A stretch of 64,000 bases of DNA, from assembly GCA_964270895.1 (NCBI GenBank), contig OZ185449.1; one strand, 5' to 3'. The translations under genes and the position numbers were made by a program. Positions 1,834-48,276 of this stretch are shown here, in pieces (within the stretch, counting starts at the first letter, position 1; the number at the start of each line of letters is the position of its first letter). The notes beneath the pieces were generated by a model. That model was not told the origin of the DNA and did no database searches. It was given only the letters and a program-made list of their open reading frames with translations. Source of the stretch: Podarcis filfolensis (taxonomy: Eukaryota).

Positions 1834-1965
1834 CTAGGCTTGCAGCCCCAGGAAGCGGGCTGTATTCAGCACGTCATCTCTCGTCAGGTAGCAGCCGCAG
1901 AGCTGGCGGTAACCTGTGAAAGACTCCCGACCGTGCAGAACTCGCCAGTTGTCCACAAACAGGGC
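1834..1965 (-). CDS. TMLHE: TMLHE exon 8, coding part (last exon, stop TAG 1836-1834)
   Basis: Acceptor ctttctgcag|; 132 nt. Encodes ALFVDNWRVLHGRESFTGYRQLCGCYLTRDDVLNTARFLGLQA*, with the distal iron-binding His (VLHGR) and the 2OG-binding Arg. Not in the ORF track because it has no start codon. The seven exons sum to 1266 nt. Confidence 0.96.
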   Translation of the reverse strand, partial: ALFVDNWRVLHGRESFTGYRQLCGCYLTRDDVLNTARFLGLQA

Positions 1966-2272
1966 CTGCAGAAAGAACGAATGGGAAATTTGTGTCCACG
2001 CTGCAAGACTCTTCCTATACCTGTTACATCATTGGCGTCTGGTTAGGTAATCTTAGCAGGAACAGACATGTAGCTCGCCTCCCCCATTCTTTTGGAAATG
2101 GAAGACAAGTGAGGAAGCTGCTTTATACAAGGGTCAGAAGATCTGTCCACCCAACCCAGGGTTGTCTGCACAGCTTTGCATTACAACTCTCTTAGTGGGG
2201 GGTAGGAAAGCTGAAAATAATGCCAGTATATTTTGCATCTGGCAACCCATGAGCCCCTTTGGTTTCAGACAG

Positions 2273-2564
2273 TACATGGGTATGAGAGTCTAAAAAGCCT
2301 GGAACACAAGTTTTTATAGCCCTCTAGTGGCTATGGTGGCTCACTGACCACAAGTAATGTATTTACTAGATGTGTATACCTGATTCTGACCAAACTAAGC
2401 CTCCTGATGTATATTGTGCTCTAGAACGCTGAGTTTGGTCAGAATCAAGAATACACTTCCAGAGTTAATGCTAAAAACATTACTTCTGGTCTATGAGCCA
2501 CCATAGCTACTAGAGGACTGTGAAAATTTGCATCCCAGGCTTTTTAGACCTATCTACCTATGTA
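2273..2564. repeat. Long imperfect inverted repeat (fold-back element) in TMLHE intron 7
   Basis: Arms 2273-2396 and 2432-2564 are reverse complements, e.g. gtctaaaaagcctgg, ctctagtggctatggtggctca and tgattctgaccaaact. Confidence 0.85.
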
Positions 2565-2570
2565 TTATAC

Positions 2571-2640
2571 ATGACCCGGAAGCTGTACACCGGCTCCCTC
2601 GGCCAATAAAGTGTGATGAGCGCCGCAACCCCAGAGTCTA
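2571..2640 (+). mobile_element. Sauria SINE internal fragment
   Basis: atgacccggaagctgtac...gagcgccgcaaccccagagtc matches 39762-39830. Confidence 0.8.
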
Positions 2641-2789
2641 AAACCAAAGGGTGCATTGATTAACAGATGTGATTCCCCCACCTCCCAGCTCTCCTACATC
2701 ACTATCTGGGTCACAGGCAGATGGGTCTTTCCTACCACTTCAACTGGAGAGGCCATGTATTGAAGGAGCATGTGTCTGTCTGTGTACGT

Positions 2790-3215
2790 TTATGTGTCTG
2801 CTCCCAGTACGTTTCCGAGCACAATTCAAAGTGTTGGTGCTGAGCTTTAAAGCCCTAAATGGCCTCGGTCCAGTATACCTGAAGGAGCGTCTCCACCACC
2901 TCATTCAGCCTGGACACTGAGGTCCAGCACCGAGGGCCTTCTGGCGGTTCCCTCACTGCGAGAAGCCAAGTTACAGGGAACCAGGCAGAGGGCCTTCTCG
3001 GTAGTGGCACCCGCCCTGTGGAATGCCTTACCACCAGATGTCAAAGAGAAAAACAACTAGCAGACTTTTAGAAAACATCTGAAGGCAGCCCTGTATAGGG
3101 AAGTTTTTAAATATTTGATGTTTTACTGTGCTAAATGCTTTTACTTTGTTGGAAGACACCCAGAGTGGCTGGGGCAACCCAGTCAAGATGGGCAGCATAT
3201 AAATAATAAATTATC
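2790..3215 (+). mobile_element. L2 3' fragment
   Basis: WLPVRFRAQFKVLVL..KALNGLGPVYLKERL; same family as 41301-42509. Confidence 0.85.
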
Positions 3216-3868
3216 ACCATAACCATCATCAGGGGATGACTTCAGAAGGTCTCCCTCTCAGCACCCCTCAACTGATGGGGGCTGAGAGCAACCCCAATCT
3301 GAGCCACATCTTGCCTTGCTCTACACCTTATGCCACATATGATGTCAGACCTTGGACAGATGGGCGTACAGCCTCATGGGCTAAACTGGCCCGTGGGTTT
3401 GAAGTTCCCCACAATATGAACATAAAAAGCTACTTTATACAGATAATTGAGTGTCTGTTGCCCACTTCACTCTTGAGCAGATGTTAGTTTGGTGTTAAAT
3501 TAGTGCTGGGAGCCACAGTATGTTCACTTCATGTTTCCCCTGAGATACTTGAAAGAGATAACAAGGATGGTTCAGATGTAGCACACATATATTTCTGCCC
3601 TCCTGCATGGAAGAGGTTGGACACAAAGCGAAGAACAGCCCTGCTGGATCAAGCCAAAAAGGCTCCACAAGTCCAGCATCTTGCTATCACCGTGTTCAAC
3701 CAGATGCCTATGAGAAGCTTGCAGGGAAGACCAGAGCAGCCCTCTCCCCACCTGCGATTCCTAGCAAGTGGCAGAGGCTCTGGCAGTCGTGGTAGAACAC
3801 AGCCATTGTTGTCACTAAGAGACATGAATAGCCCTTTCCTCTGTGAACACGTCCAACCCTCTTTTAGT

Positions 3869-4231
3869 AGATGTAAAGGGACCCCTGACCATTAGGTCCA
3901 GTCGTGACCGACTCTGGGGTTGCTCACTCATCTCGCTCTATAGGCCAAGGGTGCCAGTGTTTGTCCGCAGACAGCTTCCGAGTCATGTGGCCAGCATGAC
4001 TAAGCCACTTCTGGCGAACCAGAGCAGCGCACGGAAACACCGTTTACCTTCCCACCAGAGCGGTACCTATTTATCTACTTGCACTTTGACGTGCTTTCAA
4101 ACTGCTAGGTTGGCAGGAACTGGGACTGAGCAACGGGAGCTCACCCTGTCGCGGGGATTCGAACCGCCAACCTTCTGATCGGCAAGTCCTAGGCTCTGTG
4201 GTTTAGACCACAGCACCACCCGCGTCCCTTT
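3869..4231 (-). mobile_element. Sauria SINE, full length
   Basis: tRNA-derived head GGGACGCGGGTGGTGCTGTGG and tail GGTCAGGGGTCCCTTTAC; 14-bp TSD AACCCTCTTTTAGT (3855-3868 and 4232-4245). Confidence 0.9.
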
Positions 4232-4387
4232 AACCCTCTTTTAGTGCCATCCAAATTGCTGGCAATCTCTACGTCTTCTGGGGGCTAATTCTGTAGTTTA
4301 GCAGTGGAAGAGCACTTTACTATGAGCTGCTAGTACCAAACGCGTCCACACAAAAGCCACATGCCGATCTGCTCGCCATGACTTTAC

Positions 4388-4526
4388 CTTGCCTGGCTTC
4401 AGCTTCACCCAGAGCTCATTCTCTGGTCTCCTTAGCTCGGCGGTGAGAGTGCGGTGTGCGCTGTACCAGCGGTGCACAGTGTCGTAAGGCACCGTGTTAA
4501 TGACGGCTCGGTCGTAGTTGTTGTAC
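4388..4526 (-). CDS. TMLHE: TMLHE exon 7
   Basis: Acceptor tattttag| and donor AAG|gtaaag; 139 nt. Encodes YNNYDRAVINTVPYDTVHRWYSAHRTLTAELRRPENELWVKLKPGK. Confidence 0.97.
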
Positions 4527-5846
4527 CTAAAATAAAACAGCAGAAGGGAACATCCACAGTGCACTACTTAAGGATTGCAATCCTCACATGGGAACCAGTA
4601 AGTCTCTCAGGATCCGCATGGGCAGAGGCATGACTGCTAGAAGTGATATCTATTTATCAGTGGGAGCAAACGCTTTGTGTATATCAGAGGAAGGGAGCCT
4701 GTTGTTAAGGCTTCAGTTTCCACCAGCCAGTAAGGCTAATGGTCATGAATGATGGGAACTGTAGTATAGGAACATCTGTGAAGCCAAAAGTTCCCTATAC
4801 CTGTGCACACATAAATTGGACTTGGGTTTTCTGCAGAAATTACGGGGAAGGACAGGAATGGTGTGCACAGCCAGTAAATTTGCCCAAATAGTGCATCTTT
4901 TAGTAGCTTCACCCCTGTGATTTTTTTAAAAAAGCAAACGTTAATTTTTGGGGGGTCATTCAGTAGGAACTTGCCAGGGGGCGGGGGCAGAAGGTAATTT
5001 TGCAGCACAACTTGATTTTCCTTCTTGACCAGCCAGATTCCGTAATAAAGTGGTAACTATTTTATCAGCACAAGATCCACAATGAAGCATCGCCTGGGCT
5101 CTGGTACAGGACTATTTGCTGGGATGGCTAGAGGAACAAACAAGGACTGTAGATATATCTAGGATCACATCCCTGTTCAGCTCTGGCTGAACTCTGCTTA
5201 AGGCCTCATCTGCACTATACATTTAAAGCAGTATTGTGTCACTTTAAAACAGTCACTGCTTCCTCCAAAGAATCCTGGGAACTGTAGTTTGGTAAGTGTG
5301 CTGAGTTGTTAGGAGAACAACTATTCCCTTCACAGAACTACAATTCCCAGTGTTTCCCAGGAAGAGGTACTGGTGGTTAAATCACTTGGGTATCTCTTCT
5401 GGTGGTGGAACATGCAATTTGACCATGTTTGCATGAACACAAACTGCTCCAACTGATGTTGTCACAACCCCAGAATCCAGCAGCACCCAGCATACCAAGT
5501 AAGAGGTTGCAGAGTCACCCCCTAAGGAGCCAGAATGGGTTCTTGACACAAAGCCTGATGCTGGAGACCAGGGGGGCTGCTAAACTGGAGTCTGGTGGGC
5601 AAGAGCCCCCTGGACCAGATTCCTCAACGCCAGATCCAGGACCCTCACAGGTGCTTTCCCTGGGCCTGAGAAGAACTGCCTGTCACAGGCCCAAGTGTAG
5701 CCCCTTTAAGGACTGTAGCTATCACAAAGGAGGTGGAGCCTAGGACCAGCGACAGAGGGTCAAATGGCCTCAGTCCACCTCTAGCTTTGTTCACTTGGAG
5801 TGCTCTGTGGTGCTGCAAAGACCAGGGCAGACACTGGCCATCTCAC

Positions 5847-6083
5847 CTGATCAAGTAGATCTCGTTGTTCCAGGGGTAGACATTCAAGACAGGCCCAACC
5901 CCAATCATGTGGTTGTGGCAGCCCCCCACATTCTCGATATATTCGTGCTTCAGTGGCACCTTGGTGAGGAGCTCAAAGTCATCCGGGGCTTGCTGGAGCA
6001 CCTGCTCTGCTGCGTAGAAGCCATCCACAAGCAATGTACGACCACCTGTCCCTTCGTGCCGGAGGCAGTGAAACACCTGGATG
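5847..6083 (-). CDS. TMLHE: TMLHE exon 6
   Basis: Acceptor ctccacag| and donor AG|gtgaga; 237 nt. Encodes IQVFHCLRHEGTGGRTLLVDGFYAAEQVLQQAPDDFELLTKVPLKHEYIENVGGCHNHMIGVGPVLNVYPWNNEIYLIR. Confidence 0.97.
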
Positions 6084-8099
6084 CTGTGGAGGGCAAGGAA
6101 GGAGCCAGTCACTTGGTGGCAATAAGTAGATTCAGATGTGGGGAGGTATCCTGTTAATGCTCCTGTATCGTTCCTTTCACAATGCATCATTACCTGTTGC
6201 ATTATGGAGCTTTGGCTTTTTGACCAATATACTGTACCAGCTAAATGTTGTGCTAAATGTCACTGGGTGTGATGTGACCCAGCTATGGACATTGTTGTAG
6301 AAAGTCACTCTTTCTGCATGTGTGCTTCCATTTCCCCATGGAACCCACAGGAAAGAAATGTAGGCTGGCATTATCACCCCAAATTTTGCCAATTACTCCC
6401 ACGATCTTCTGGGTTAATGCAGTTGCATGCTGATTTTATTCTGGAAGTAATTAACATGGAAATGAGCACCGAACTTCCACTATGCTTCACTAGATTTCTA
6501 GTAATGGCCTTTATGTCATGCGAAAGTTCAAATATAATGTGGAAATTAACAGGGAAACTGAATGTAGCCTGGAAAGTGATTCTGCTGTGGCTCTAAGAGT
6601 GGCCCTGACACGTCAGATCAACAAACTCTCTTGTGGTCCTTTGTAGTGGCCTTGTTCTAAACCAGGTGTGGGACACTAGAGCTGGCCAATAGTCAGGATT
6701 CTTATCTCTCTCCTTGTCCCCAATTCGACAGATGAGCAGAGCCGGCCACCTGCCAATCACCCCAAGCCACAATGTCAGGTTTCACATTCTTGTCTGTGTG
6801 GTTTGAAACCAAAGAGTGCAGGTGAAAAGCAAAGCCCTGTGCTCTGTTAAGCATGGAAAATGAGCTGCGTGTTTGTGCTTCAAAGCCCCATGCACAGGGC
6901 TTTTCAGGCACCACTGATCAGCTGACTGGCAGTGCCTACAGCCTCTCTTTTGACTCAGCCATGTCATATGTGGCATCAGGTGTAGAGCAGGTATGTAAGG
7001 CTTGGTGGGCCAAATGGGGAGGCCTAACAGGCATAACTAGGCCTGTGGGCCAGGGGTTCCCCACTGCTGTTTTTGACATTACTCTTGTCTTTACCACTTT
7101 GGCTCCTGGCTCATTAAAATAAGTCTAGTCCCTGGGAGGAAATGAGTAGAAAGCACAGCATCCATTTCCTGATACAGAAGGTATCTCAAGTAGAACAGCA
7201 CCTGGTTCCTCCTTGCTTTGGGCTCCTGGAACATCAGACTTCAGGTTGCTGCCAAAAGGTTACTGAATCTGCATTTCTGGATGCAAACCACTGAATGCCT
7301 CCCATATGCACCTGGTTCAGTCACCTGGATTTAGTTAGGGAATAAGGCTAAAACTTCCACTGCTGCATCTAGTTTGGAATTGGCCTAAACAATATAGGCC
7401 TGCAATGGACCTGGACCTAAGCCTTCTGTATATAAAACACAGACTATGCCAGCTACCTACAGTTTCTGTCCACTTGTCTATTTATGTAGAGAAATGTGTT
7501 TAAACCCTCTCCCTCTCTATTGCTTCTGTTAGTTATTAGAAGGGGCAAAACTAATATTGCTAGGTCTCTGAAGTTCAGCTGGCTTCTGAGAATCTACAAA
7601 GCATTTTTGTTTCCCTTTACTATCTTGAGGTCTAGAAACCTGCTTCTTGTCTTTTGATCATAACATATTACATATAGCGGTGAATATAATGGTGCAACCT
7701 CAGGCTTTTTCAACTTCTTTTCTTTTCCCCTTAGAGAGATTTTAAACTTTGCAGTCTCTGTGCTGGATACGTTCTCCCAAAATCTTGTCCAAGGTCAATG
7801 TTTTCAGGACCTGTTCAGAGCGCTATTCAAGCAGGTGCAGGCTGTTTGGAATTGCCACAGGTTAAAGGGACTTAAATTCCTCTGTACTAGAGCTTTCTGC
7901 AATGTGACTATATTAGGGTGATGGCTAGGTTTTGAAATTCACGTAACTGGGTAATAAAAACATCAAACTGCTGTCACTGGTAATAAAGGCAGGACTGCTT
8001 AGTTTCCTGTTGGTTTTCTGAAGCACTCTGAGAAGCTGGAAGAGATTATCACAGCTGGGGAGTCCCTTAATGCCCTGTGCTGTTGCATTCTTCACTGTA

Positions 8100-8718
8100 A
8101 AGGTACAGTGGTACCTCACAAGATGAATGCCTCGCAAGACGAATAACGCGCAAGACGAAAGAGTTTTCCGTTTTTTGAGTCGTTCCGCAAGACGAATTTC
8201 CCTATGGGCTTGCTTCGCAAGACGAAACGTCTTGCGAGTTTGTTTCCTTTTTCTTAAAGCCGCTAAGCCGTTAATAGCCGCTAAGCCGTTAATAGCCGTG
8301 CTTTGCAAGACGAAAAAACCGCAAGACGAAGAGACTCGCGGAACGGATTAATTTCGTCTTGCGAGGCACCACTGTAAAGGTAAAGGGACCCCTGACCATT
8401 AGGTCCAGTCGTGGCCGACTCTGGGGTTGCGGCGCTCATCTCGCTTTATTGGCCGAAGGAGCCAGCATACAGCTTCCAGGTCATGTGGCCAGCATGACTA
8501 AGCCACTTCTGGTGAACCAGAGCAGCGCACGGAAACACCGTTTACCTTCCCCGCCTATGTATCTACTTGCACTTTGAGGTGCTTTCAAACTGCTAGGTTG
8601 GCAGGAGCAGGGACCGAGCAACGGGAGCTCACCCTGTTGCGGGGATTCGAACCGCCAACCTTCTGATCGGCAATTCCTAGGCTCTGTGGTTTAACCCACA
8701 GCGCCACCTGTGTTCCTC
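8100..8718 (-). mobile_element. Sauria SINE with a MITE inserted in its tail
   Basis: Same family as the 3869 copy; 14-bp TSD CATTCTTCACTGTA (8086-8099 and 8719-8732). Confidence 0.9.
8106..8374. mobile_element. Tc1/mariner-pogo-type MITE with internal GCAAGACGAA repeats
   Basis: TIR CAGTGGTACCTC / GAGGCACCACTG; TA TSD on both sides. Confidence 0.85.
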
Positions 8719-8839
8719 CATTCTTCACTGTACTCCTTTCAAAAATAATCAGGAAGCAGGTGATGTGAAGGACCTTTAGAGAACCACTGCCACAGAGCTG
8801 ACACTATTGACCTAGATGGGAAAGTAGTGTGATCTGATA

Positions 8840-9023
8840 GGAAGCTGCCTTATACCAAGGCAGATCATTGGTTCATCTAACTCAGAACTGTCAACTCTGA
8901 CTGGCAGCAGGTCTTCTAGGGTTTCAGACAGGGTTCTCCCCCAGCCTTACCTAGAGACGTCAGGGGTTGAACCAGGGACCTTCCTTATGCAAAGCAGATT
9001 CTCTACCACTGAGCTATGGCTCT
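8840..9023 (-). mobile_element. Old tRNA-derived SINE (representative copy)
   Basis: Degenerate A/B boxes (agccatagctcagtggtagag...ggttcaacccc on the minus strand). Similar copies at about 17505-17686 (+), 18890-19050 (+), 28048-28182 (-), 58205-58335 (-), 59845-60195 (-) and 61460-61600 (-). Confidence 0.6.
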
Positions 9024-9309
9024 AACTGATGTAAAAACAGCTTCCTGGGATTCTTAATAGGCTGGCTCCTAATTGCAGGTGCAGCCACTGTTGATAAGCT
9101 CAGGGGAGCCTGCCCTACTGACAATGACTGAAGTCATAGCAGACTCAAAATGTGAATGCCCCACAAAGTCTACAGCATTTGTTGAGGTAAAATGAACCTG
9201 ACTACTCTGGCAGGGTGGGTTCCCTGAACCCTGTAAGGTGGAGTGGGAATGGGGGTAGTTACTGGAAGATTTAGCACAGATTTTTAAAAGTGTTTCACGC
9301 AGCTCAGAG

Positions 9310-9545
9310 TCAAACTATAGAACTCTCTCTCCCAGGAGGCAGTGATGGAGGGCTTTAAAAGAAGATTAGGCAAATTCATAAAGCTATCGATGGCTTCTAG
9401 CTCCACAGTCAGAGGCAGCAATACCAGCTGTTGGAAACCACAGGAGGGGAGATTTGCCCTTGTGCTCATGCTCTGCTCCCTGGCATACCACATGCATCTG
9501 GTTGGCTACTGTGAGAAAAAGGATGCTGGACTAGATGGGCCATGT
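9310..9545 (+). mobile_element. CR1-type 3' end
   Basis: caggaggcagtgatgg..ggctttaaaagaagattag..aaattcat followed by an ...atgctggactagatgggcc tail. Confidence 0.6.
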
Positions 9546-9771
9546 AAATTTGTTAAACAATTCAGGCCTCAGGATAACTTAAAATACATCTGCATTACTT
9601 ACTTAATCACCTAGACAACGCTTGGACGGAAGCCCAATGTAGGCTGTTCTAAAGACGTAACCAGGATAGAAGTATTAAACATAATAATGTGGTTAAACCT
9701 GATCATGACAAAAAGGAACAGTGCATTTGTGACTCGTGTCAGTCCCTGCCTCTTAGGCCATTGGAACATAC

Positions 9772-9891
9772 CCACAGGGTTCCTGGAAATAAGTGGTATC
9801 TGTGTGACGGTCCAAAGCCAGCTTGGTGTATGCTGTGTCTCCCCGGGAGAAGTCAGAGGTGAAGTGCCACATCCTGCCGTAGATAGTCTCC
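9772..9891 (-). CDS. TMLHE: TMLHE exon 5 (HxD iron-binding motif)
   Basis: Acceptor ttttccag| and donor GG|gtatgt; 120 nt. Encodes ETIYGRMWHFTSDFSRGDTAYTKLALDRHTDTTYFQEPCG, including the HTD of the 2-oxoglutarate/Fe(II) facial triad. Confidence 0.97.
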
Positions 9892-9898
9892 CTGGAAA

Positions 9899-9900
<2 letters not shown>

Positions 9901-9934
<34 letters not shown>
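9901..9934. repeat. (GA)n microsatellite forming the exon 5 polypyrimidine tract
   Basis: About 17 GA units immediately upstream of the exon 5 acceptor on the minus strand. Confidence 0.95.
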
Positions 9935-9936
<2 letters not shown>

Positions 9937-11737
9937 CACACGCATAAAGGCCTCTGTGTTGGCACCAACCACTAAGGCCACAGCAGGTGGGCTTGATGAC
10001 AATTCATGCAAATGAGCAGGTGAAGCAACACCTGTGCAGACCAATTCTATCTATGCTTGCTCAGACGCAATTTCCACAGACTTGGAAGCGTGCATGAAGT
10101 TAGATCTTTCGACAAAGGGGCAATATATAAATATAATAAATAAATAAATTACAAGAACAGGTGAGTTCCTCAAAATACACATCTCGGGTATCAAAGTCCA
10201 GGGAAAAGAGGAGTGTCCTCAGCATAAGGCAGAAACAATATGATGAAGGTTCCAGACACATCTCTGTGAGGAGGAATTTCTACAACTTAAAAGGCTGTCA
10301 AAGAGAATGCCCTTTCCTGGGCCACTGAACCTCTGAGTGTGATGGAACTGCCAAGAGGGTCTCCCTCTGCTTATCTAAACACCCGCAATCAGCTACTCCT
10401 ACTTCAGCTATTTCTCTCTGAACCCAGTCCTGAATTCCCTTCTGGGGTTAAGGATAGCAAGTCTGAATCTTGTCTGCACATGCCAATCTTTCAGGAGTAA
10501 CAATATTTACTAAAGCAAGAACGAATCTGGGTGGATTTGAGAAGATGAAAAGGGAATCCAGCCTTAAGAACAAGCCACGCATGGGAGGGGTTGAAAGGAA
10601 CAATCATCAGACACAGCAGCAAGAAAGACTAGAAGCTCCCAGGCCAAAGAGGCTGCTCAGGCCACTTCCAGGCTGGAGAGAAAGGGAGCCAGCAGGCAGG
10701 CAGCTGGTATAAATCCCTTCTTTCCTAATCCCCCAGGGCAATCCAGGGTCAGCCTGACAACTGCAGTTTAGATTGGAAGGGGCGGAGAAGAGAAACATTC
10801 CTTGTACTTTCCTCTGACGTCCCAAGCACTGCTTTGGTCTTTGGGTCTCCAGGGGCTGAGGCTGTTTCTCCTAACCTTTCCAGGGAAAACAGGAAGCAGT
10901 GATTGGCGTGAACACTAAAATGTTCCCAGCCTGCCAAAAGAACTTGCTCCTTGTTCTATGCTCAGCTCTGGCAGCTCTTGAACAAATGCTAAAGGAAAAG
11001 ATGGTACTCTTCCCCCCACCTTCTTTATTGTGAGCAGGAAGAAAAATAAACCCCAGTTCTGTGCAGCAACACAATAATCCTCAATAGACATCAGCATGGA
11101 GCACATTATCTAGGGCATGAGAAGAAATGCCACAACCACCAGGGCCCAGGTGCAACTGATGCAGGTAGACAAGGACTAAACAAACCTGGAGCACTCCAGA
11201 TTTTTTGGACTGCAACTCCCATCAGCCTCATCTAGCACAGGAGCTGATGGGCATTGCAGTCTAAAACACCTAGATGGCACCAGGCAGCTGAAGGCTGGAT
11301 TAAACCATATCTCAGTGGTAGAACACAGATTTTGCATTTAGAAGGTGCAAGATAATAAATAAAATGTGCTTTTTAAAAAGTACCCTTCGTTGCATATATA
11401 AAGTGCTTTGCAACTCTCGTCCTGCCTAAATTCTTTTAACACAGGGGTGGAGAAGATGCAGCACTTCATATGTCTCCGGACTAAAATAATCCATAGCCAC
11501 TGGCTGGGTCTGATGAGAGCTGGAATCCAACAACATCTGCAGGGTCAGAGGTCAATGCTTCCGAGTCTCTTTCCAGCCCTATGAGCATCAGAAGGAGATG
11601 CTGAATGGAAAGGCTGCAGACTCTGGAATGCTACACTCCTTTCTCAGCTCAGTCAGAGGAGAAGCACAGCAGTGTTGTGACCCAACGCAGGCAAGCCCCT
11701 GACATATTTCCACTTACCAAAACACCCACACAGTTAC

Positions 11738-12017
11738 CTGATCAAGCTGATCCTCTCTGCTAAGATCTCGGTGTCTTCTTTGGTTGGGGGGACGTTTTCC
11801 ACAAATGCGATCCCGTAGAGCAAGAAGTTCTGCAGGAACTCTTTCAGGCCCTCGTTGGTCTCCAGGAAGCTCTGGCAGTCCACTGAGGGCACTTGGGCTT
11901 CCTGGTAGATCTGAGCATTCCAGAGAATGCGTGGCTGCATGACCTGCTGCTTCTGCCCTTCGTAGCTGTTCTTCAGCAGCCATTCCAACCCATACCTCGT
12001 CACGTGGCCATCTGGCC
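11738..12017 (-). CDS. TMLHE: TMLHE exon 4
   Basis: Acceptor ctcccag| and donor AG|gtaact; 280 nt. Encodes WPDGHVTRYGLEWLLKNSYEGQKQQVMQPRILWNAQIYQEAQVPSVDCQSFLETNEGLKEFLQNFLLYGIAFVENVPPTKEDTEILAERISLIR. Confidence 0.97.
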
Positions 12018-14996
12018 CTGGGAGACAGACAGGATTAGTGCAAACATTTTTCGAAATGCGAAAGGCAGATCTGGGTAACTGATAAGTCTTTTATGATCAG
12101 AGAAAAAGAGAGAGAAACACAGAGAGAGTCCACAGTCTGTTTCTTCCAGCAGCCTTTTGTGCAACCCTTTGATCTTCTATGTAGCGTCAATGCAACCCAG
12201 GGCTAGGGAAAGCTGTTGTTGGGATTCCAGATGTTGTTGGACTCCAACTTCCATCAGCCTCTGACAGCACAACCAATGATCAGGGATGATGGAAGCTGGA
12301 CTCTAAACAACAGAAAAAGCCACAGGCTCCCCAGTCCTGATCAAACCTAAAGGCTCACCTTTTTCTATGTGAAGCTGAGCCAGTCCTGCATTAACTCTGC
12401 AATATTTTGCTGGGTTGCTTTTACGCCTAGATTTATGCAACTGGAATTTGGTTGCATACTGAGGTTATTTTGAGTGCACGTTGGGATTTTATGGGGCTTA
12501 ATGTTTGTTTTGCCTTTACTACTTTTAGCTGCCTTGAGCTTCTTTGCAGAATAAGGTAGAACATGAGTTTTAAAAATAAAACAAAACTGAATGAAATACT
12601 GAAAGAGTGGTTTGGTTTGATAAGGTTTAGCATATGGCTGAAATGACCAAACTTGCTGAACTTGTTGTTCTGTATATTTTTAATGAAAATATTCAAGTCC
12701 AAGTAAATAAGCAGTAACAACTTCACTTTCATCTAAAACCAGAGCCAGCCAGAGGGCAGTTGTTTCTCATGCCCTCAGTTTACAGAAGGGCTTCTTCTGA
12801 AAACAACACTTAATCAAGGGAGAAGCTTGCATGCTTCCCATAGGCATTTGGTTGGGCCCTATGAGAACAGAATGCTGGACGAGTTGGGCTTTTGGCTTAA
12901 CACAACAGGACTCTTATCAGCAGGAAAACGCATATAACAATCACAGGGTCTCTTCTAGGGCTGTTCTCTAAGAATTAAACCTCTGTATTATGCCTTACCT
13001 AAGTAAGAAATTAGTTTTTAGTTATTAGGTACTAGCTAAATATTAAATAGAAGTAGACTAGAGGATGTATTGATGCTCTGTTGAAGTTTCCAAATATCAG
13101 TTTCCTGTAACCAAGCAGCTAATAGCACATTATGTTGTTAAAAACAAGGAGGTGATTAATCTTTCTAAAAAACAGGCGCAAATCATACCTGGCACAACAG
13201 AATGCCCAAGGAGCTATAGGTTTCATGCATGGGCAGAATCATCAAAAGCAGGAAATAATGTTGGATATTTTAAGACCCTTTGCCATTTTAGGAATGAAAA
13301 TTAATAGTCACAGGAGGAGAGACAAGGAAGTATAAAGGTGGGGCTCAAATTCTGTGCTGCTATGATTTGGACTGTGTGTAGTGCTTCATCAATGGAGATT
13401 TGTTTTCTTACACTGCTTCTGAGTTTGTAAGTCTAGAAGCTTTTGCTGTGAAAGGGTGTGATTGGTTTACTTGTTTTTGTTTATTTATTTTGCTATTAAA
13501 TAAAAATCCTTCTTGGTCATTTGTCTGCAGCGATATGGTATGTGACATTTGCTGAAGCTCGAAAGCCTATGTCTTGGGAAAAATTGCTGAGTTCTCAGCA
13601 ACCTTTGACCCCAGCAGTCTCCCATGAATGATGGTTACTCATTGACTAGAAGGAGTCTTTAAATGGTTTTGGCTGTTATTTTGTACTAAGAATTGTTAGG
13701 AGACAGAATAAGAATATTGCTCAGTCAGTTCAGAAAGACAGCTCAGTGAAGTAAGCCTGAAGTCCAAATTAAGAGGAGTTCAGAAGTGTCCAGTACATAT
13801 AGTATACAGCACAGTAAAAAGCAATAAAAGCAACTGAATAAATATAGGGGTATAAAATTCAAGTCCACAGGAAAGGGTCTATTTTTAGGATCTATTTATA
13901 TCTATTTGTATTATTTAATAGCAAATTTTGATTAAACCTATTTTTGACAATTAAGCTTGCTTTTTAATCCAAGAACACATGAAACAGTATGAGGATGTGA
14001 GAATGTGTGAAGTTGCAATTGGATAGGTGTATAACAAGAATGGAAACTTGATGACTATATAAGGCAACATCTAAATGGATTCCTATGAGAAGGCAATACC
14101 AAAAATTAAGCTCAATAATTGATCAATATTTAAGATAACATCTAAATGGATTCAAAGAAGAAGAAGGTATAATAATTTTAAAGTGTGCACATAGTTAACA
14201 CTGCCTGCCTGGATGCTCTTAAGTATTTGTTTAAATGTCTTAGAGAATTTTAATGGTTTTGAGTATGGAATCAGCTGTTTGCTGAAATGATGTTGCTTAT
14301 TTAGTTTAGCTACTTCCCATGGTTAAAGTACAAAAGGTATTTACAGGACAATATTACTGAGTTTTGAAGAAGAATAACTCAGAAAAATGGAAAATGTGAT
14401 TAAGTCTCTCAAAAATATTAATTACTGTAATCCAAAATCATAGTTGCATATGATTTGACAAAACTTCTTCGTTAATTCCTGATTCCTGCCAGGAATATCC
14501 TTTCTGTTTTTGCTTCTTTGCTGATTTTGTAGACCTGCCTCAGCAAAAGGGCAACAAGAGCAACAAGGAAAACAACCATTTACGTTTTATGCTATGTCTT
14601 ATTTACTTGTTATTAGTCTTGTGGCCGTAACAGAACCATATTTGAACTTATTTTATTATGACTTACTTTTAAATCCTTAAGAATCCCTATGGACTCCTTC
14701 TGTGTTGGATTTTTTTTTATTAAAAAAAATTACTTTGTAGGAATCCTTAAGAAGCAAATTCTTGGTATCAGGATCGCTAGCGAAGTAATGAAGACGGGTG
14801 TGAACCCATCTTTTACAGGTTCCTTTTCTTCAGATGTTCAAAGAATTTCAAGTTTCCTCTTCTTTTACCACAAATAAACGGAAAAAGCCTCTTGGTTTCT
14901 TCTTTACTCAAGTTGTGCTCTTGAGAAATCCTTCTCTGCATCCTCCCCTGCTCCCCCCTCGTCTAAACCCCAGAAAACAAGGCTCCATGGACTCAC

Positions 14997-15173
14997 AGGT
15001 AAGAAAGAGTGTTGTTTCATCCACACGGACGCTCTTTGGCCTGATGCACAGATCCACACTGGCTGTGTCCAAGCTGCGCTGGTTGGTCTTGGTATTGTAG
15101 CAGGAAGCCGAGCGGCAGTGATCACGTAGCCAGACGTAGTCAAAGCGCATGAGGACATCCCCATATTTCAGCT
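14997..15173 (-). CDS. TMLHE: TMLHE exon 3
   Basis: Acceptor ttcctag| and donor T|gtgagt; 177 nt. Encodes ELKYGDVLMRFDYVWLRDHCRSASCYNTKTNQRSLDTASVDLCIRPKSVRVDETTLFLT, the GBBH-like N-terminal domain. Confidence 0.97.
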
Positions 15174-15769
15174 CTAGGAAACACACACACACCACTTGGC
15201 TAAATGCAAGAAACAATAAGGAGGATTTTCATCCAAATGAAATCCCACTCTTTGCCAGAAACTTTTAATAGCAGCTAATTTAGGTCACATGCATCCCACA
15301 CATTTAAAGCAACCCCAAAGAATCCTAGGACCTGGAGCTCCCACAGCCATGACTATTAAAGTGGCATGAATGTGCTTCAAATGTACAATATGGATGCAAC
15401 CTTCTAATAACGAACACATTCTGCAAGCGCGCATGGCAACACAGCCAAGACGGCACCAACTGACTCGCAAGAAGTCAGCTTCAAGCAAGCTTGGCGGAAT
15501 TCCGAGGTTTACAAAAGTACAAAAAACTCTGGGGGGAGGGAGACCCTAAAGAAAAAGAGGGCTCACACAGCTCAATAAAGGCTGAGTTTGCTCTACAGGC
15601 ATAGAATGCTGATTGACTAACTGCATGGAGGGAAAAACTGATTGTCCTAAGAAAGCAGCACGGCTGGCTGGCATCTTGAATGGAAGCGCTTTTGCCCAGG
15701 AAGCCACTCACATGCTCTGACATTTATCCTTCCCAGCCCTTCAAAGCCCCTCACCCCCAGGCTACTTAC

Positions 15770-35214: not shown

Positions 35215-35303
35215 TAGCTAAAGTGGTGCTTCAGGTTAAGAACAGTTTCAGGTTAAGAACGGACCTCCGGAACGAATTAAGTACTTAACCCGAGGTACCA
35301 CTG
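35215..35303 (+). mobile_element. MITE family A, 3' fragment
   Basis: Right TIR aacccgaggtaccactg followed by TA. Confidence 0.8.
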
Positions 35304-35474
35304 TATATAAGAAAGTTTCTCTAACTGGCAGCCTTCTCTGATTTTCCTTTCAGAAGATCTACCGGTAATTGTAGAAGACCTCGAGGAAGAGCAGGAAGAG
35401 ACTGGAGGGAGATGGCAGGAGGAAAAAACACCAAGGAAAACTTGAAGGTAATGTCGATTTCCAAGGATATGTTT

Positions 35475-36349
35475 TTTCAAAAAAATAATATTTATTAAAA
35501 TTTCAAAGAATTACAAAAATAAAGGAAAATAAAACAAAAATACAAAATACAGAAAAATACAGAAAAATAAAAACAATTAAAAACAAGTCAATTTTTCCAT
35601 ATCTTATCTTTCATTTGCTTGTTTCCTTGACCTCCTCACACCTCCCTTTTTTGTGTTCTAGTTCAATTAGTTAATTAAGCAAATCCTTTCCATCTTTGTT
35701 TTTATCTTAATAATTTATCTTAGTATATTGTAACTTTACATTCTCACCTGTTAACGATCCATTTTTACATACTCCTTTGTAACATTACTGCTAAAACCAC
35801 ATAACTTCATTCCAGCATCCTTCTAACATTCCTTAATTTTACAATATTTCTGTAGATATTCTTTAAATTTCTTCCAACCTTCTTCTACCGGCTCTTCTCC
35901 CTGGTCTCGGATTCTGCCAGTCATTTCCGCTAGTTCCATGTAATCCATCACCTTCATCTGCCATTCTTCCCGGGTGGGTAGATCTTGTGTCTTCCAATAC
36001 TTTGCAATAAGTATTCTTGCTGCCGCTGTAGCATACATAAAAAAAATTCTATCCTTCTTTAACAGCGATTAGCCGACCATGCCCAGGAGAAAAGCCTCTG
36101 GTTTCTTCAAAAATGTATATTTAAATACCTTTTTCATTTCATTATAGATCATCTCCCAGAAAGCCTTAATCCTTGGGCACGTCCACCAAAGGTGAAAGAA
36201 TGTACCTTCAGTCTCTTTATATTTCCAGCATTTATTATCAGGCAAATGATATATTTTTGCAAGCTTGACTGGTGTCATGTACCACCTGTAGATCATTTTC
36301 ATTAGATTCTCTCTTAAGGCATTACATGCCGTAAACTTCATACCTGTGG
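35475..36349 (-). mobile_element. L1 3' fragment
   Basis: ORF2 C-terminus YRWYMTP...CWKYKETEGTFFHLWWTC and AAARILIAKYWK; 15-bp TSD TCCAAGGATATGTTT (35460-35474 and 36350-36364). Confidence 0.9.
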
Positions 36350-36484
36350 TCCAAGGATATGTTTAGGGTACTGTATATAGGAAAGTCCCTAAAACAGTTA
36401 TAATTGTTAGCCTTATCTTCTTTTCCATTAGATGACATAATATTTGAAGATCTGGAGGGAGAGCAAGGCAGGAAAGCTTTTATA

Positions 36485-36714
36485 CAGTGGATGCTCGGGT
36501 TGCGAACGTGATCCGTGTGGGAAGCACATCCACAACCCGCAGCATCCTCAACCTGCAGCGCCACGTCTGCGCACACGTGGGTTGCAATTTGGCGCTTCTG
36601 TGCATGCACAAGTGCCGAAACCCGGAAGTTACCAGTTCTGGTACTTCCGGGTTTGGTGCGGTGCGCAACCCAAAATCGCACAACCCGAAGCGCCTGTAAC
36701 CCGAGGTATGACTA
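36485..36714 (+). mobile_element. MITE family B (CAGTGGATGCTCGGGTTG...CCCGAGGTATGACT)
   Basis: TA TSD; matches the 53293-53519 copy in reverse. Confidence 0.85.
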
Positions 36715-36720
36715 TACTGA

Positions 36721-36894
36721 CACCATGAACCACAGAATCTGAGCACAGAGTTTGCCATCACTCTCTACCAACGCTGGGCAGAGCTCCACCATGGAACGAA
36801 CCTCGCCATTTCCCCAGTGAGCATGTCTCTTTCTTGGGGGTGCAAGAGAGCACATTGGCCCAACTGCAGCATGCTCTGAGATACAGCACTCATG
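36721..36894 (+). pseudogene. SERPINE3-like orphan coding exon, frameshifted
   Basis: The frame from 36721 reads HHEPQNLSTEFAITLYQRWAELHHGTNLAISPVSMSLS. After a frameshift near 36834 it reads GVQESTLAQLQHALRYSTH, then a phase-1 donor G|gtaagg. Recalled human SERPINE3: [57 protein letters not shown]. In-frame TGA at 36718; no signal peptide seen. Confidence 0.72.
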
Positions 36895-37664
36895 GTAAGG
36901 CAACCTTCTGAGAAACAGCTTTTCAGTGTGCAGTGCATGCTGTCGTGAACTTCACCTTACAGTTTGGACTGTCCTGGTAGGGAAAGCATATAAAAACAAA
37001 AGCAAGTCATACAAGGGGCCTTACTTCTGAGTTAACCCCCCTTTCGTGCCATGCTCTTCACTTCAGTGGGCTTTGCATGTGCATGCTACACCTTTAAAGT
37101 ACATTCTTTCCCCCAAAGAATTCTGGGCACTGTAGTTTACTCCTCAGTCCCAGCAACACTTAACGAACTGCAGTGCCCAAAATTCTTTAAGGAAAGAATG
37201 TGCCTTAGGGGTTGAACTAGATGACCCTTAGGTCCTTTCTAACTCTACAATTCTATGATTCTGTGAATGCACATGGAACCGTGTATTGGTATATGCTAAA
37301 AGCCACACTTTGGTTCTGTTGAAATCAGTCACAGCTAGCTAAGTCCCATTGATTTATGAAAGTGTGGCTAATTTACAGCACAATCCTATGCATGTCTACT
37401 CAGAAGTAAGCCCTGTTGACTTTAGTGGGGGTTACTCCCAAATAAGTGGGTATAGAATTGTGGATTCATATCAACAGAGGATGGGCTTTTGATTTAACTG
37501 TCTCACCTGCTATAAATTATTTAATGCAAAAAAGTGACTAACAGTATAAACTTAATGATGTCTACTCAGAACTAAGTCCTTGTGAATTCCATGGGGCTTA
37601 CTCCCAAGTAAATGGACAGAGAAGTACTTTGAATGAAACAGTGGATGTATGATTTTTGTGGTTC

Positions 37665-38529
37665 ATGCTGTGGCCACAGTCATGTGATTTGATGGTGAGT
37701 TTGGGGTTGCCCAATGCAAAAATCCTGAGCATCCATGTGGATCTGTGCTTTGTAACCATGTTTTTGCGCCATTGTGGCCCCATGAAACAGTGGGTGCATT
37801 TTTAAAAAAAAAAATTGGTGCAGGCTGTAGCCATGGACATGCTATGTGCTCTGATGGTGAATCTGGGGTGACCCAGTGCAAAAATCCTGAGGATCCATGT
37901 GGATCTGTTCTTTGTAACCACGTTTTTGCGCCATTGTGGCCCCACGCAACAGTGGGTGCATTTTTTTGGTGCAGGCTGTAGCCATAGATATGCTATGTGA
38001 TCTGATGGTGAATTTGGGGTGACCCAATGTAAAAATCCTGAGGATCCATGGGCTTTTACCTCCCCCCTCCCAGGCAGCCTCCTTTATCACTAGTGTCCCT
38101 TATCTCCCTCCTGATCCCTTACCGATCAGCTGCTTTCTTTCAACACTCCTTTCCCTCTTGTTTGCCTTAGTGTCTTTTCCTTAGATGGAGCAGTTTTTTT
38201 CTCCTCCTTTTCTTCTAATTTCTCTCCTCATTGCTTTAGTCTTCCTGTCTCCTCTCCTTGCAAGTTCACTGTCTTTACCTCCCCACTCCCAGACAGCCTC
38301 CTTTATTGCTAGCCTCCCTTATCTCCCTACGGATCGCTTGCCGATCAGCGGCTTTGTTTCAACACACACTTCACTCTTTCAAAAAAAAGGGGGGGGGAAG
38401 CATGATCTGCTTTTTGCCCCTGGGCAATTCGGCTCCAGGGACCACACATGCACTCCATAAGACACACAGACATTTCCCCTTACTTTTTAGGAAGAAAAAA
38501 GTGTGTCTTATGGAGCGAAAATTACGGTA
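37665..38529. mobile_element. Mariner-type non-autonomous element fragment with internal tandem repeats
   Basis: ~150-160-bp unit x2.4 (37665-38052); ~95-bp duplication (38053-38150 and 38272-38372); terminal GTGTCTTATGGAGCGAAAATTACGG followed by TA, with an internal inverted copy CTCCATAAGACAC. Confidence 0.6.
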
Positions 38530-39059
38530 ATTACATATTAAGAATGCCAGGTAAAACAAAGAGAATAATCTCAGAATATTGCTACCACTAATATATTCAA
38601 ACCACTGTAGAATGCAGCAATAAACAGCAAACAAAACAGGAACAGAACAGTGTTTCCGGGATAAGTCAACTGTTTCAAGGATGATTCTTCATCAGCTGAT
38701 AATAAAATTGGATACATTACATTCAGTTATGAAAACAGAAATAGCAGTGGTTTGAATATATTCTCCCTACGTTGGAGCACCTACCACTACAATATTGCTG
38801 GACGTTGACTATTGAAAGGCATCCTGCCTTCGCCGCGGTGTTCCCTGACAGCAATTTATTATGCTTACTATTTCTTGTTTATGAACTTTTGCATAACCAT
38901 GCATATATTATATGTGGATGCTGCAAGGAGGAAAAGGAGGTGAAGAAAGTTGAAGAAAGACAGTGAACGAACAAGAAGGGGAGCAGAAGGCACAGTGGAG
39001 TGTAGGCTAAGCAGGAAAATGGTAGCATTGAAAGACTGAGTCAGCGTCTTTGTCTTCAC

Positions 39060-46750: not shown

Positions 46751-47204
46751 TTTGTGCTCATGTTGGTGAGCTGGATGGGAGTTGGACCTTCACAACAACT
46801 GGAAGGCATCATGCTGTCCACATACTAGCTAGGAAGGCAGTGGCCGGGTGGTCTGTGTGCCTGCTCAGTCTGCAGTCCAAGTGTCTATTGTGAACAAGCG
46901 ACATAAAAACCCATCCCCCATTCTTAGGGTTATGTTTCAACTGCACTTGGAGCAGACAGCCCTTCAAACACAGCAATCCTTCAAAGAAAGTATTGTCTTC
47001 CAGCTGTCATTTACATGGAGGACTGTCCTCCTAGCACTGCAGTAAGACACATGGCCACTTATTTCCCTTATTTCCAGTTATGGAAAATAGAATGCATCCA
47101 TCCAAGTGGCAACCCTGGCTTAGCCTATTCCTGCCCACTAGAGGTCCTCCTAAGTCAAAGAATGAGAACAGTTCCAATATTTCCTCCTATTTGCATGGAA
47201 CTAC

Positions 47205-48068
47205 AGCAAACTGGCAAGTTCTTAAAGAAATGGGAGTGCCTGAACACCTTATCTGTCTCCTGAGAAATCTCTATGTGGGACAAGAAGCTGCAGTTAGAAC
47301 TGGATATGGAACAACTGATTGATTCAAAATTGGGAAAGGAGTACGGCAAGGCTGTATATTATTTAACTTATATGCAGAATTCATCATGCGAAAGGCTGGA
47401 CTGGAGGAATCCCAAATCGGAATTAAGATTGCCGGAAGAAATATCAACAACCTCAGATATACAGATGATACAACTTTGATGGCAGAAAGTGAGGAGGAAT
47501 TAAAGAACCTCTTAATGAGGGTGAAAGAGGAGAGCACAAAATATGGTCTGAAGCTTTTTTTTTTTTTTAAATGAAGATCATGGCCACTGGTCCCATCACC
47601 TAGAAGGGGAAGAAATGGAGGCAGTGAAAGATTTTACTTTCTCGGGCTCCATGATTACTACAGATGGTGACAGCAGTCACGAAATTAAAAGACGCCTCCT
47701 TTTTGGGAGAAAAGCGATGACAAACCTAGACAGCATCTTAAAAAGCAGAGACATCACCTTGCCAACAAAGGTCCGTATAGTTCAAGCTACGGTTTTCCCA
47801 GTAGTGATGTATGGAAGTGAGAGCTGGACCATAAAGAAGACTGATCGCCGAAGAATTGATGCTTTTGAATTATGGTGCTGGAGGAGACTCTTAAGAGCCC
47901 CATGGACTGCAAGAAGATCAAACCTATCCATTCTGAAGGAAATCAGCCCTGAGTGCTAACTGGAAGGACAGATCCTGGAGCTGAGACTCCAATACTTTGG
48001 CCGCCTCATGAGAAGAGAAGACTCCCTGGGAAAGATATAGATGTTGGGAAAGATTGAGGGCACAAGGA
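47205..48068 (+). mobile_element. RTE-BovB LINE RT/C-terminal fragment
   Basis: WQVLKEMGVPEHLICLLRNLY, GRNINNLRYTDDTTLMAESEEELK and SRDITLPTKVRIV..FPVVMYGSESWTIKK..RIDAFELWCWRRLLR. Confidence 0.9.
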
Positions 48069-48270
48069 TCTGTGCGGAAGGCACATTCGCAACCCGCAGT
48101 GTTCCAACCCGCAGAGCGGCATCTGCACACCCACGGGTTGCAATTCAGCACTTCTGTGCATGCACAAGTACCAAAACCCGGAAGTAAGCTGTTCCAGTAC
48201 TTCTGGGTTCGGCACAGTGCGCAACCCGAAAACACGCAACCTGAAGCGTCTGTAACCCGAAGTATGACTG
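48067..48270 (+). mobile_element. MITE family B, left end lost and fused to BovB
   Basis: Starts about 25 nt inside the family consensus; right end gtatgactg followed by TA is intact. Confidence 0.8.
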
Positions 48271-48276
48271 TACTTG

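What the first reader, a model, noticed from the sequence alone, without database searches (positions are those of the whole stretch)
36432..36900. Hidden SERPINE3-like exon relic beside TMLHE, missing from the ORF track
Seen: two frames joined at about 36834 give NLSTEFAITLYQRWAELHHGTNLAISPVSMSLS / GVQESTLAQLQHALRYSTH, followed by a canonical phase-1 donor G|gtaagg. Established: this matches serpin helix A to hB/hC and aligns with the recalled SERPINE3 sequence [35 protein letters not shown]..HD. Clade E serpins have a phase-1 intron at this position. Amniote SERPINE3 normally lies next to INTS6/FAM124A, not TMLHE. Inference: about 16 nt (ELLQF region) are deleted, there is a TGA at 36718, a MITE sits at the 5' edge, and I found no further serpin exons. 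Because the intron donor is kept, this is a DNA-level copy, not a retrocopy. It is either a captured or duplicated SERPINE3 fragment or the last trace of a lost clade E paralogue in the X-homologous paralogon (13q/Xq pairs such as INTS6/INTS6L and SPRY2/SPRY3 exist).
Basis: partly seen in the sequence, partly recalled or inferred. Interest (0 to 1): 0.72.

Follow-up and report, generated by a model that had tools for sequence, protein, structure and literature searches.

The report
Dead SERPINE3 exon copy near TMLHE
This lizard genome carries a broken, unused copy of the first protein-coding exon and adjoining intron of the eye-related serpin gene SERPINE3; it is an old duplicate found in several lacertid lizards, an ordinary pseudogene fragment and not the trace of an ancient lost gene.

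Summary
Two reading frames at 36721-36896 encode SERPINE3 residues 24-88. They are separated by a 16-nt deletion and end at the SERPINE3 phase-1 donor (G|gtaagg). A TGA lies at 36718 and a MITE at the 5' edge. No other serpin exon occurs in the 64 kb.

The piece is SERPINE3-derived. The only hit among 1.84 billion representative proteins is Varanus SERPINE3. The best tblastn hit is Zootoca SERPINE3 (85% identity, E 1e-19).

About 0.9 kb of exon plus intron 1 aligns to the intact SERPINE3 genes of four lacertids at 88-91% (ungapped columns). It is therefore an unprocessed DNA duplicate. This refutes the idea of a lost clade-E paralogue of the 13q/Xq paralogon.

The duplicate is old. Lacerta agilis and Zootoca vivipara carry inverted copies 2.5-10 kb downstream of their intact SERPINE3. 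The Lacerta copy has the same 16-nt deletion and the same 5' junction, which removes the ATG and signal peptide. In a tree the window copy groups with these copies, apart from the functional genes (89% support).

In the copies the exon part diverges as fast as the intron part, so it evolves neutrally.

I could not settle why this copy sits upstream of TMLHE and not beside SERPINE3. The cause is either a rearrangement or a secondary copy. Interest is low.

The parts
36721..36833 (+). Relic of SERPINE3 coding exon 1, first frame (parent residues 24-62; helix A to s6B)
   Evidence: 77.5-85% aa identity to lacertid SERPINE3. DNA homology to the parent exon starts at 36722, which is parent nt 71.
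36834..36896 (+). Relic of coding exon 1, second frame (parent residues about 67-88; hB/hC). A 16-nt deletion lies between 36833 and 36834.
   Evidence: The identical 16-nt gap is present in the Lacerta agilis inverted duplicate.
36718..36720 (+). In-frame TGA at the junction between upstream-derived and exon-derived sequence
   Evidence: AGA in the L. agilis copy.
36897..37644 (+). SERPINE3 intron 1-derived sequence, starting with the conserved phase-1 donor gtaagg
   Evidence: blastn window 36722-37629 to L003 10071-10984 (84.3% with gaps) and to L002 10071-10948. 87-91% in ungapped columns. Donor phase.
37645..38526 (.). Insertion relative to the parent intron, made largely of tandem repeats (162 nt x3, 219 nt x2)
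38527..38594 (+). Last piece of intron 1 homology, marking the 3' limit of the duplicated segment
   Evidence: matches L003 10979-11053, L002 10982-11016 and the L. agilis duplicate at 24215-24130.
36485..36714 (.). Tc1/mariner-type MITE with a TA target duplication (36483-84 and 36715-16), inserted just upstream of the exon relic
   Evidence: Copies at 53290-53521, 48067-48274 and 45185-45449. Terminal inverted repeats and TA flanks in alignment A2. Site is empty in the L. agilis copy.
36349..36482 (+). Upstream unit B. It is homologous to a segment 2-4 kb upstream of the SERPINE3 ATG in lacertids and is joined directly to the exon relic (internal deletion of the ATG and signal peptide).
   Evidence: L002 7793-7905, L003 7060-7157, L004 6371-6482, L001 5755-5834, and the L. 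agilis duplicate at 25051-24917.
35302..35473 (+). Upstream unit A, a second copy of the same exon-like unit, separated from unit B by an L1 insertion
35474..36348 (-). 5'-truncated L1 (ORF2 C-terminal end) with a 15-nt target duplication, inserted into the duplicated segment
   Evidence: ORFs. Flank continuity in L. agilis, L002 25038-25051.
1837..15228 (-). TMLHE coding exons seen (context only): 14911-15228, 9756-9971, 5846-6259, 4301-4567, 1837-2028
   Evidence: Motif scan. TauD-domain TMLHE hits at 86-93% identity.

Best explanation
The feature is an unprocessed partial pseudogene.

Origin: before the wall-lizard (Podarcis), Lacerta and Zootoca lineages split, a DNA segment of the SERPINE3 5' region was duplicated. 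The segment held an upstream piece, coding exon 1 and about 0.8-0.9 kb of intron 1.

Damage in the copy: an internal deletion removed the ATG, the signal peptide and the first 70 nt of the exon. A further 16-nt deletion broke the frame.

Fate: the copy has since drifted neutrally. In this genome it was later hit by a MITE, an L1 fragment and a tandem-repeat insertion.

Function: it has no protein-coding function. The intact donor is inherited and has not yet mutated; it is not maintained.

Shown: its SERPINE3 origin, its DNA-level nature, its age relative to the three genera and its neutral decay.

Inferred: that it is not transcribed, and how it came to lie about 12-20 kb upstream of TMLHE.
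For: SERPINE3 origin:
- Sole hit in 1.84e9 proteins is Varanus SERPINE3.
- 77.5-85% aa identity to five lacertid SERPINE3 proteins, E about 1e-18 to 1e-19.

DNA-level copy:
- Exon and intron 1 are collinear with L001-L004 over 0.5-0.94 kb, at 88-91% in ungapped columns.
- The donor is at the parent's phase-1 position.

Old and shared:
- Inverted copies lie downstream of intact SERPINE3 in L. agilis (L002 24923-24389) and Zootoca (L003 32581-31942).
- These two copies are positional orthologues of each other.
- The window copy and the L. agilis copy share the identical 16-nt deletion and the same junction of upstream unit to exon nt 71.
- The maximum-likelihood tree separates the four functional genes from {window, Lagi_dup, Zviv_dup} with 89% ultrafast bootstrap.
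- 25 sites are shared by the window and the Zootoca duplicate against the two functional genes that cover them (Lacerta, Zootoca). Six more are shared with the Lacerta duplicate against all four functional genes.

Neutral decay:
- Between genera, the functional genes are 94.8-96.9% identical in the exon against 85.9-91.4% in the intron.
- Window against functional genes is 89-91% in the exon against 87-91% in the intron.
- The L. agilis copy has lost the donor (GT to GG).

Later insertions: the MITE and L1 sites are empty in L. agilis.

All five lacertids in the database keep an intact 402-aa SERPINE3.
Against: - Outside the SERPINE3-derived segment, the window's flanks do not align to the flanks of the L. 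agilis or Zootoca copies. No SERPINE3 3' end lies within 27 kb. Positional orthology is therefore unproven.
- Tree support is moderate (89% for the main split, 54% inside the copy group). Gene conversion between gene and copy could blur it.
- The exon part of the Zootoca copy lies beyond the end of the fetched locus.
- I did not verify the species of the window. Earlier notes say Podarcis, and my tree is compatible with that.
- No read data could be obtained, so transcription is untested.
Confidence: 0.9

Rival explanations
1. The fragment reached the TMLHE-upstream site as a secondary copy of the already broken SERPINE3-adjacent duplicate. The route could be repair-templated insertion or carriage by a mobile element. 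Lacertid genomes would then hold two or more such copies, with later loss of one in some lineages. This refines the best explanation; it does not replace it.
For: - The flanks are not shared with the SERPINE3-adjacent copies.
- In P. muralis both flanks of the copy's exon-intron part are kept next to SERPINE3, but that part itself is absent.
- SERPINE3 lies on 118-125 Mb chromosomes. Xq28/GGA4p genes such as gab3 were tested as Z-linked candidates in lacertids (PMC6534595), so TMLHE may be on another chromosome. That last step is inference.
Against: - No terminal repeats or transposon ends frame 35302-38594.
- The left limit merely abuts a SINE.
- Copy number per genome was not measured.
Confidence: 0.45
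2. A chromosomal rearrangement in the wall-lizard lineage moved the single old duplicate away from SERPINE3 into the TMLHE neighbourhood. Alternatively, SERPINE3 and TMLHE are neighbours in lacertids at more than 35 kb distance.
For: - In the tree the window copy sits outside the Lacerta and Zootoca copies, as Podarcis does among the functional genes.
- The SERPINE3-adjacent exon-intron part is absent within 10 kb in two Podarcis species.
- No WD40 (WDFY2-like) gene lies within 10 kb downstream of SERPINE3 in lacertids, unlike Thamnophis and Sceloporus.
Against: - The sequences that flank the copy in L. agilis remain next to SERPINE3 in P. muralis. That looks like a clean local absence, not a breakpoint.
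- The window holds none of the sequence that lies between the copy and SERPINE3 in Lacerta or Zootoca.
Confidence: 0.4
3. The relic is the last exon of a lost, ancient clade-E serpin paralogue of the 13q/Xq paralogon.
For: Only its position beside TMLHE, an Xq28 gene.
Against: - Intron sequence aligns to lacertid SERPINE3 at 87-91%.
- The relic is nearest to lacertid SERPINE3, then other squamates, then turtles and birds.
- Copies with the same lesions lie next to SERPINE3 in two other lacertids.
Confidence: 0.01
4. The relic is this species' own SERPINE3 gene, decayed in place.
For: No other SERPINE3 sequence of this genome was available for comparison.
Against: - It shares derived lesions with a copy that coexists with an intact gene in L. 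agilis.
- It groups with the copies, not the functional genes.
- Five lacertids, including three Podarcis, keep an intact SERPINE3.
- There are no relics of exons 2-8 in the window.
Confidence: 0.03
5. The piece has been taken up as an exon of a non-coding or chimeric transcript, using its kept donor at 36896/36897.
For: The donor is intact. An AG lies at 36736-36737 just inside the relic.
Against: - The exon part diverges at the intron rate.
- The donor is lost in L. agilis.
- There are no RNA data.
Confidence: 0.05

Closest known systems
SERPINE3 of lacertid lizards (Zootoca XP_034964559.1, Podarcis muralis XP_028577895, Lacerta agilis XP_032998586.1; 402 aa, 8 coding exons)
   Same: Coding exon 1 from nt 71 to the phase-1 donor and the first 0.8-0.9 kb of intron 1 are homologous. 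Identity is 77.5-85% at the protein level and 88-91% at the DNA level.
   Different: The relic has no ATG or signal peptide and no exons 2-8. It has a 16-nt frameshift deletion and evolves neutrally. It is not next to the 3' end of a SERPINE3 gene within 27 kb.
Inverted partial SERPINE3 duplicates downstream of SERPINE3 in Lacerta agilis (L002 24130-25051) and Zootoca vivipara (L003 31942-32581+)
   Same: Same duplicated segment, same 16-nt deletion and same 5' junction (Lacerta). They form one group in the tree.
   Different: Those copies lie 2.5-10 kb from the intact gene. The window copy lies upstream of TMLHE, with unrelated flanks and with extra MITE, L1 and tandem-repeat insertions. The Lacerta copy has lost the donor GT and has AGA where the window has TGA.
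Unprocessed (duplicated) pseudogene fragments in vertebrate genomes generally
   Same: Intron retained, truncated at both ends, frameshifted, neutral divergence, later transposon insertions.
   Different: Nothing of kind. It is notable only for persisting since before the Podarcis, Lacerta and Zootoca lineages split.
SERPINE3 gene losses in poorly sighted mammals (eLife 2022, PMC9355568)
   Same: Both are inactivated SERPINE3 sequence with frameshifts and deletions.
   Different: Those are losses of the single-copy gene at its conserved locus. Here the functional gene is intact in every lacertid examined and only a spare fragment is dead.

Membership tests
Serpin superfamily (Pfam PF00079) | Significant match to the serpin profile | tested here: inconclusive
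   Frame A scores 19.7 bits (E 5.7e-4), below the 27-bit gathering score, because only 30 profile positions are present. Frame B (20 aa) gives no hit. Homology is established by the SERPINE3-specific tests in the next rows.
SERPINE3 orthogroup (sequence derived from SERPINE3) | Closest relatives are SERPINE3 and not other serpin clades | tested here: met
   The sole phmmer hit in 1.84e9 proteins is Varanus SERPINE3. tblastn identity falls in the order lacertids, other squamates, turtles and crocodiles, birds, fishes. The clade A chains that head the PDB search score only E 0.05-0.3.
SERPINE3 orthogroup (sequence derived from SERPINE3) | Exon boundary at the SERPINE3 coding exon 1 donor, phase 1 | tested here: met
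   The donor is 259 nt after the ATG in six squamate genes, and the relic aligns to it.
Functional SERPINE3 gene | Start codon, signal peptide, open frame, eight coding exons including the reactive-centre loop | tested here: not met
   The first 70 nt are absent, a TGA lies at the junction, a 16-nt frameshift is present, and exons 2-8 are absent from the window.
Unprocessed (DNA-duplicated) pseudogene fragment | Intron and upstream non-coding sequence copied with the exon | tested here: met
   About 0.8-0.9 kb of intron 1 and an upstream unit align to the parent loci.
Unprocessed (DNA-duplicated) pseudogene fragment | Neutral evolution of the former coding part | tested here: met
   Exon identity is about equal to intron identity for the copies. 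In the functional genes of different genera the exon is 3-9 points more conserved than the intron.
Processed retrocopy | Intronless, poly-A tail, target duplications | tested here: not met
   The intron is retained and the piece ends inside intron 1.
Relic of an ancient paralogue (ohnologue) | Divergence from SERPINE3 comparable to that between clade E members; no intron homology; presence at the same site in distant vertebrates | tested here: not met
   Intron homology at 87-91% to lacertid SERPINE3. The site in distant vertebrates could not be examined.
Gene fragment captured by a transposon (Pack-type element) | Fragment framed by the element's terminal repeats and target duplication; same composite at unrelated sites | tested here: inconclusive
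   No terminal inverted repeats frame 35302-38594. Genome-wide copy number is not testable with these tools.

The most novel reading that the evidence does not exclude
The fragment records a lineage-specific movement of DNA from the SERPINE3 neighbourhood on a large autosome into the TMLHE region. In lacertids that region may belong to the Z chromosome, which is homologous to chicken 4p and the human X. The relic would then mark an evolutionary breakpoint, or an inter-chromosomal templated insertion onto a sex chromosome, that could be dated from its shared lesions.
Probability: 0.2. Interest if true: 0.35.

Novelty: new member of a known kind. Interest (0 to 1): 0.15.

Why it matters
It matters little by itself. 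It shows that a plausible-looking 'hidden exon' beside TMLHE is a dead spare piece of SERPINE3, and it removes the suggestion of an unknown clade-E serpin or paralogon relic. Its practical value is for annotation: the fragment, and its relatives beside SERPINE3 in Lacerta and Zootoca, could mislead gene predictors. It is also a datable marker (shared 16-nt deletion, shared junction, lineage-specific MITE and L1 insertions) for rearrangements of the SERPINE3 and TMLHE regions in lacertid lizards.

Tried and rejected
Each piece was searched by reference only. Because of that, and because the protein search only sees proteins of 0.55-1.75 times the query length, I could not obtain a lacertid TMLHE protein to look up its chromosome. 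The TMLHE exon search returned only unnamed fragments and non-lacertid partials.
- Varanus SERPINE3 model: it is not on record as a gene position.
- PDB search: the frame A search ranks clade A serpins first, but the scores are weak. The SERPINE3-specific results overrule it.
- Hit at 47825-47905: this tblastn hit to a Varanus 'Serpin E3' model is a BovB-type retrotransposon translated inside a mispredicted protein, not a serpin exon.
- Apparent collinearity: the same spacing between the relic and 47518-48068 in the window and in L. agilis dissolved once intervening offsets were checked, and the segment is that transposon.
- Inverted repeat 36708-36737 / 37654-37683: it spans the MITE boundary and I take it for chance.
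- Earlier notes: searches for SERPINE3, WDFY2 and INTS6 found nothing. Literature searches for TMLHE in lizards found nothing relevant.
- Human sequence: I took no contig for human.

Full report
**Observation**

- In the frame that opens after TGA (36718-36720), 36721-36837 reads a 39-residue stretch.
- One base further on in frame, 36837-36896 reads a 20-residue stretch that ends in G|gtaagg.
- Pfam's Serpin profile matches the first piece at profile positions 3-32 (E 5.7e-4, 19.7 bits). That is below the gathering score only because the piece is so short.
- phmmer of the 39 residues against 1.84 billion representative proteins gave a single hit at E 2.8e-4. It is a 302-aa protein named 'Serpin family E member 3' of Varanus komodoensis.
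- I then collected 120 SERPINE3 proteins and seven lacertid cluster members and ran tblastn against the window.
- Every one of them hits the two pieces in their two frames and nothing else credible in the 64 kb. The best is Zootoca SERPINE3, aa 24-63 at 85% and aa 68-88 at 67%, E 1.3e-19.
- Identity falls from lacertids through other squamates, turtles and crocodiles, and birds to fishes. The piece is therefore SERPINE3-derived and nearest to lacertid SERPINE3.
- The window has no N.
- TMLHE exons lie on the minus strand at 1837-15228. The relic is upstream of TMLHE and divergent from it.

**What it is**

I fetched the SERPINE3 loci of Podarcis muralis (L001), Lacerta agilis (L002), Zootoca vivipara (L003) and P. 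raffonei (L004), with Thamnophis (L005) and Sceloporus (L006) as outgroups.
- Window 36722-37629 aligns collinearly to the parent gene from nt 71 of coding exon 1, through the donor, into intron 1. The matches are L003 10071-10984, L002 10071-10948, and L001 and L004 10071-10584.
- Identity in ungapped columns is 88-91%.
- A last piece of intron 1 homology follows at 38527-38594, after an 0.88-kb insertion of tandem repeats.
- The relic's donor aligns to the parent donor. That donor lies 259 nt after the ATG (phase 1) in all six squamate genes.
- The gap between the two frames is exactly 16 nt of the parent sequence.
- Upstream, 36349-36482 and 35302-35473 are homologous to a unit that lies 2-4 kb upstream of the ATG in the parent loci.
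- The copy therefore lost the ATG, the signal peptide and the first 70 nt of the exon through an internal deletion. The TGA sits at that junction.
- This is an unprocessed DNA-level partial duplicate. It is not a retrocopy or an ancient paralogue.

**Age**

- L. agilis carries an inverted copy 2.5 kb downstream of its intact SERPINE3 (L002 24923-24389, with units up to about 26.5 kb).
- Zootoca carries one about 9.4 kb downstream (L003 32581-31942, cut by the end of the locus).
- These two copies are positional orthologues of each other.
- The L. agilis copy has the identical 16-nt deletion and the identical unit-to-exon junction.
- A maximum-likelihood tree of the shared segment separates the four functional genes from {window, L. 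agilis copy, Zootoca copy} with 89% ultrafast bootstrap.
- 25 sites unite the window with the Zootoca copy against the two functional genes that cover them (Lacerta, Zootoca). Six more unite it with the Lacerta copy against all four functional genes.
- The duplication and both deletions therefore predate the split of these genera.
- Within the copies the window branches outside Lacerta and Zootoca, as Podarcis does among the functional genes. Earlier notes of this scan call the genome a Podarcis. I did not check that independently.

**Decay**

- Between genera, the functional genes are 94.8-96.9% identical in the exon but 85.9-91.4% in the intron.
- For the window against the functional genes the figures are 89-91% (exon) and 87-91% (intron). 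Against the L. agilis copy they are 86.9% and 88.8%.
- The former exon thus evolves like intron.
- The L. agilis copy has also lost the donor GT.
- After the split from the Lacerta lineage, the window copy took up three insertions:
  - a Tc1/mariner-type MITE at 36485-36714, with a TA duplication and three other copies in the window;
  - a 5'-truncated L1 at 35474-36348, with a 15-nt duplication;
  - the tandem-repeat block at 37645-38526.
- The MITE and L1 sites are empty in the L. agilis copy.

**What stays open**

- Outside the SERPINE3-derived segment, the window's flanks share only transposons with the flanks of the Lacerta and Zootoca copies. No SERPINE3 3' end lies within the 27 kb to the right.
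- In P. muralis and P. raffonei the exon-intron part of the copy is absent within 10 kb downstream of SERPINE3. In P. muralis the sequences that flank it in L. agilis are still there.
- In Thamnophis and Sceloporus a WD40 gene of about 400 aa, WDFY2-like, starts 6-7 kb downstream of SERPINE3. In lacertids none is called within 10 kb.
- SERPINE3 lies on 118-125 Mb chromosomes. The lacertid Z is homologous to chicken 4p and the human X, and the Xq28 gene gab3 was tested as a Z-linked candidate (PMC6534595). TMLHE may therefore be on another chromosome, but that is inference.
- Two readings remain: the old copy was copied again to the TMLHE region, or a rearrangement moved it. I could not test this.

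**Comparison and verdict**

SERPINE3 is a secreted serpin with eight coding exons, a conserved gene order from human to zebrafish and a role in the eye (PMC9355568). All five lacertids in the database keep it intact. The window holds only a spare, dead fragment of it. This is a new instance of a very common kind of feature. The 'duplicated fragment' reading is right. The paralogon reading is refuted. Interest is low.

Noticed in passing
L001 27931-28083 (Podarcis muralis, 8.5 kb downstream of the SERPINE3 stop): A duplicate of SERPINE3 coding exon 7 reads on for 51 codons. It matches at 100% the C-terminus (aa 360-410) of a 410-aa UniRef/Ensembl isoform (P0126). It may be an alternative exon for the reactive-loop end of the protein. 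It is not seen in P. raffonei, Lacerta or Zootoca flanks, or in the window.
   Followed up: partly
window 35302-35473 and 36349-36482; L002 24917-26561; L001 24525-25162; single copies upstream of the ATG at L002 7756-7905, L003 6998-7157, L004 6337-6482, L001 5721-5834: An exon-like unit with AG and GT at its borders and an acidic reading frame. It occurs once upstream of lacertid SERPINE3 and as arrays downstream of the gene. Its nature (untranslated exon, regulatory module or local repeat) is unknown.
   Followed up: partly
window 36485-36714, 53290-53521, 48067-48274, 45185-45449: Four copies, about 80% alike, of a roughly 230-nt Tc1/mariner-type MITE with 22-nt terminal inverted repeats and TA target duplications.
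   Followed up: partly
window 47200-48068 (minus strand relative to L003 12648-13538): A BovB/RTE-type reverse-transcriptase fragment, 90% identical to a copy inside Zootoca SERPINE3 intron 2. The same element is translated inside a mispredicted Varanus 'Serpin E3' protein (P0034 aa 170-196), which produced a false serpin hit.
   Followed up: yes
window 37653-38378: Tandem repeats (162 nt x3, 219 nt x2) form most of an 0.88-kb insertion inside the intron-derived part of the relic.
   Followed up: no
L005 33569-36689 and L006 27314-31166, compared with L001-L004: A WD40 gene of about 400 aa (WDFY2-like) follows SERPINE3 within 6-7 kb in Thamnophis and Sceloporus. None is called within 10 kb in four lacertids, where the interval holds SERPINE3 fragments and repeats.
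   Followed up: no
L004 15478-15903 (minus strand): A 141-aa CD225-family gene is called antisense inside a P. raffonei SERPINE3 intron.
   Followed up: no
window 38600-64000: No host gene was recognised to the right of the relic. The first 15 kb is mostly L1, BovB, SINE and MITE pieces, and 54-64 kb has no long open frame.
   Followed up: partly
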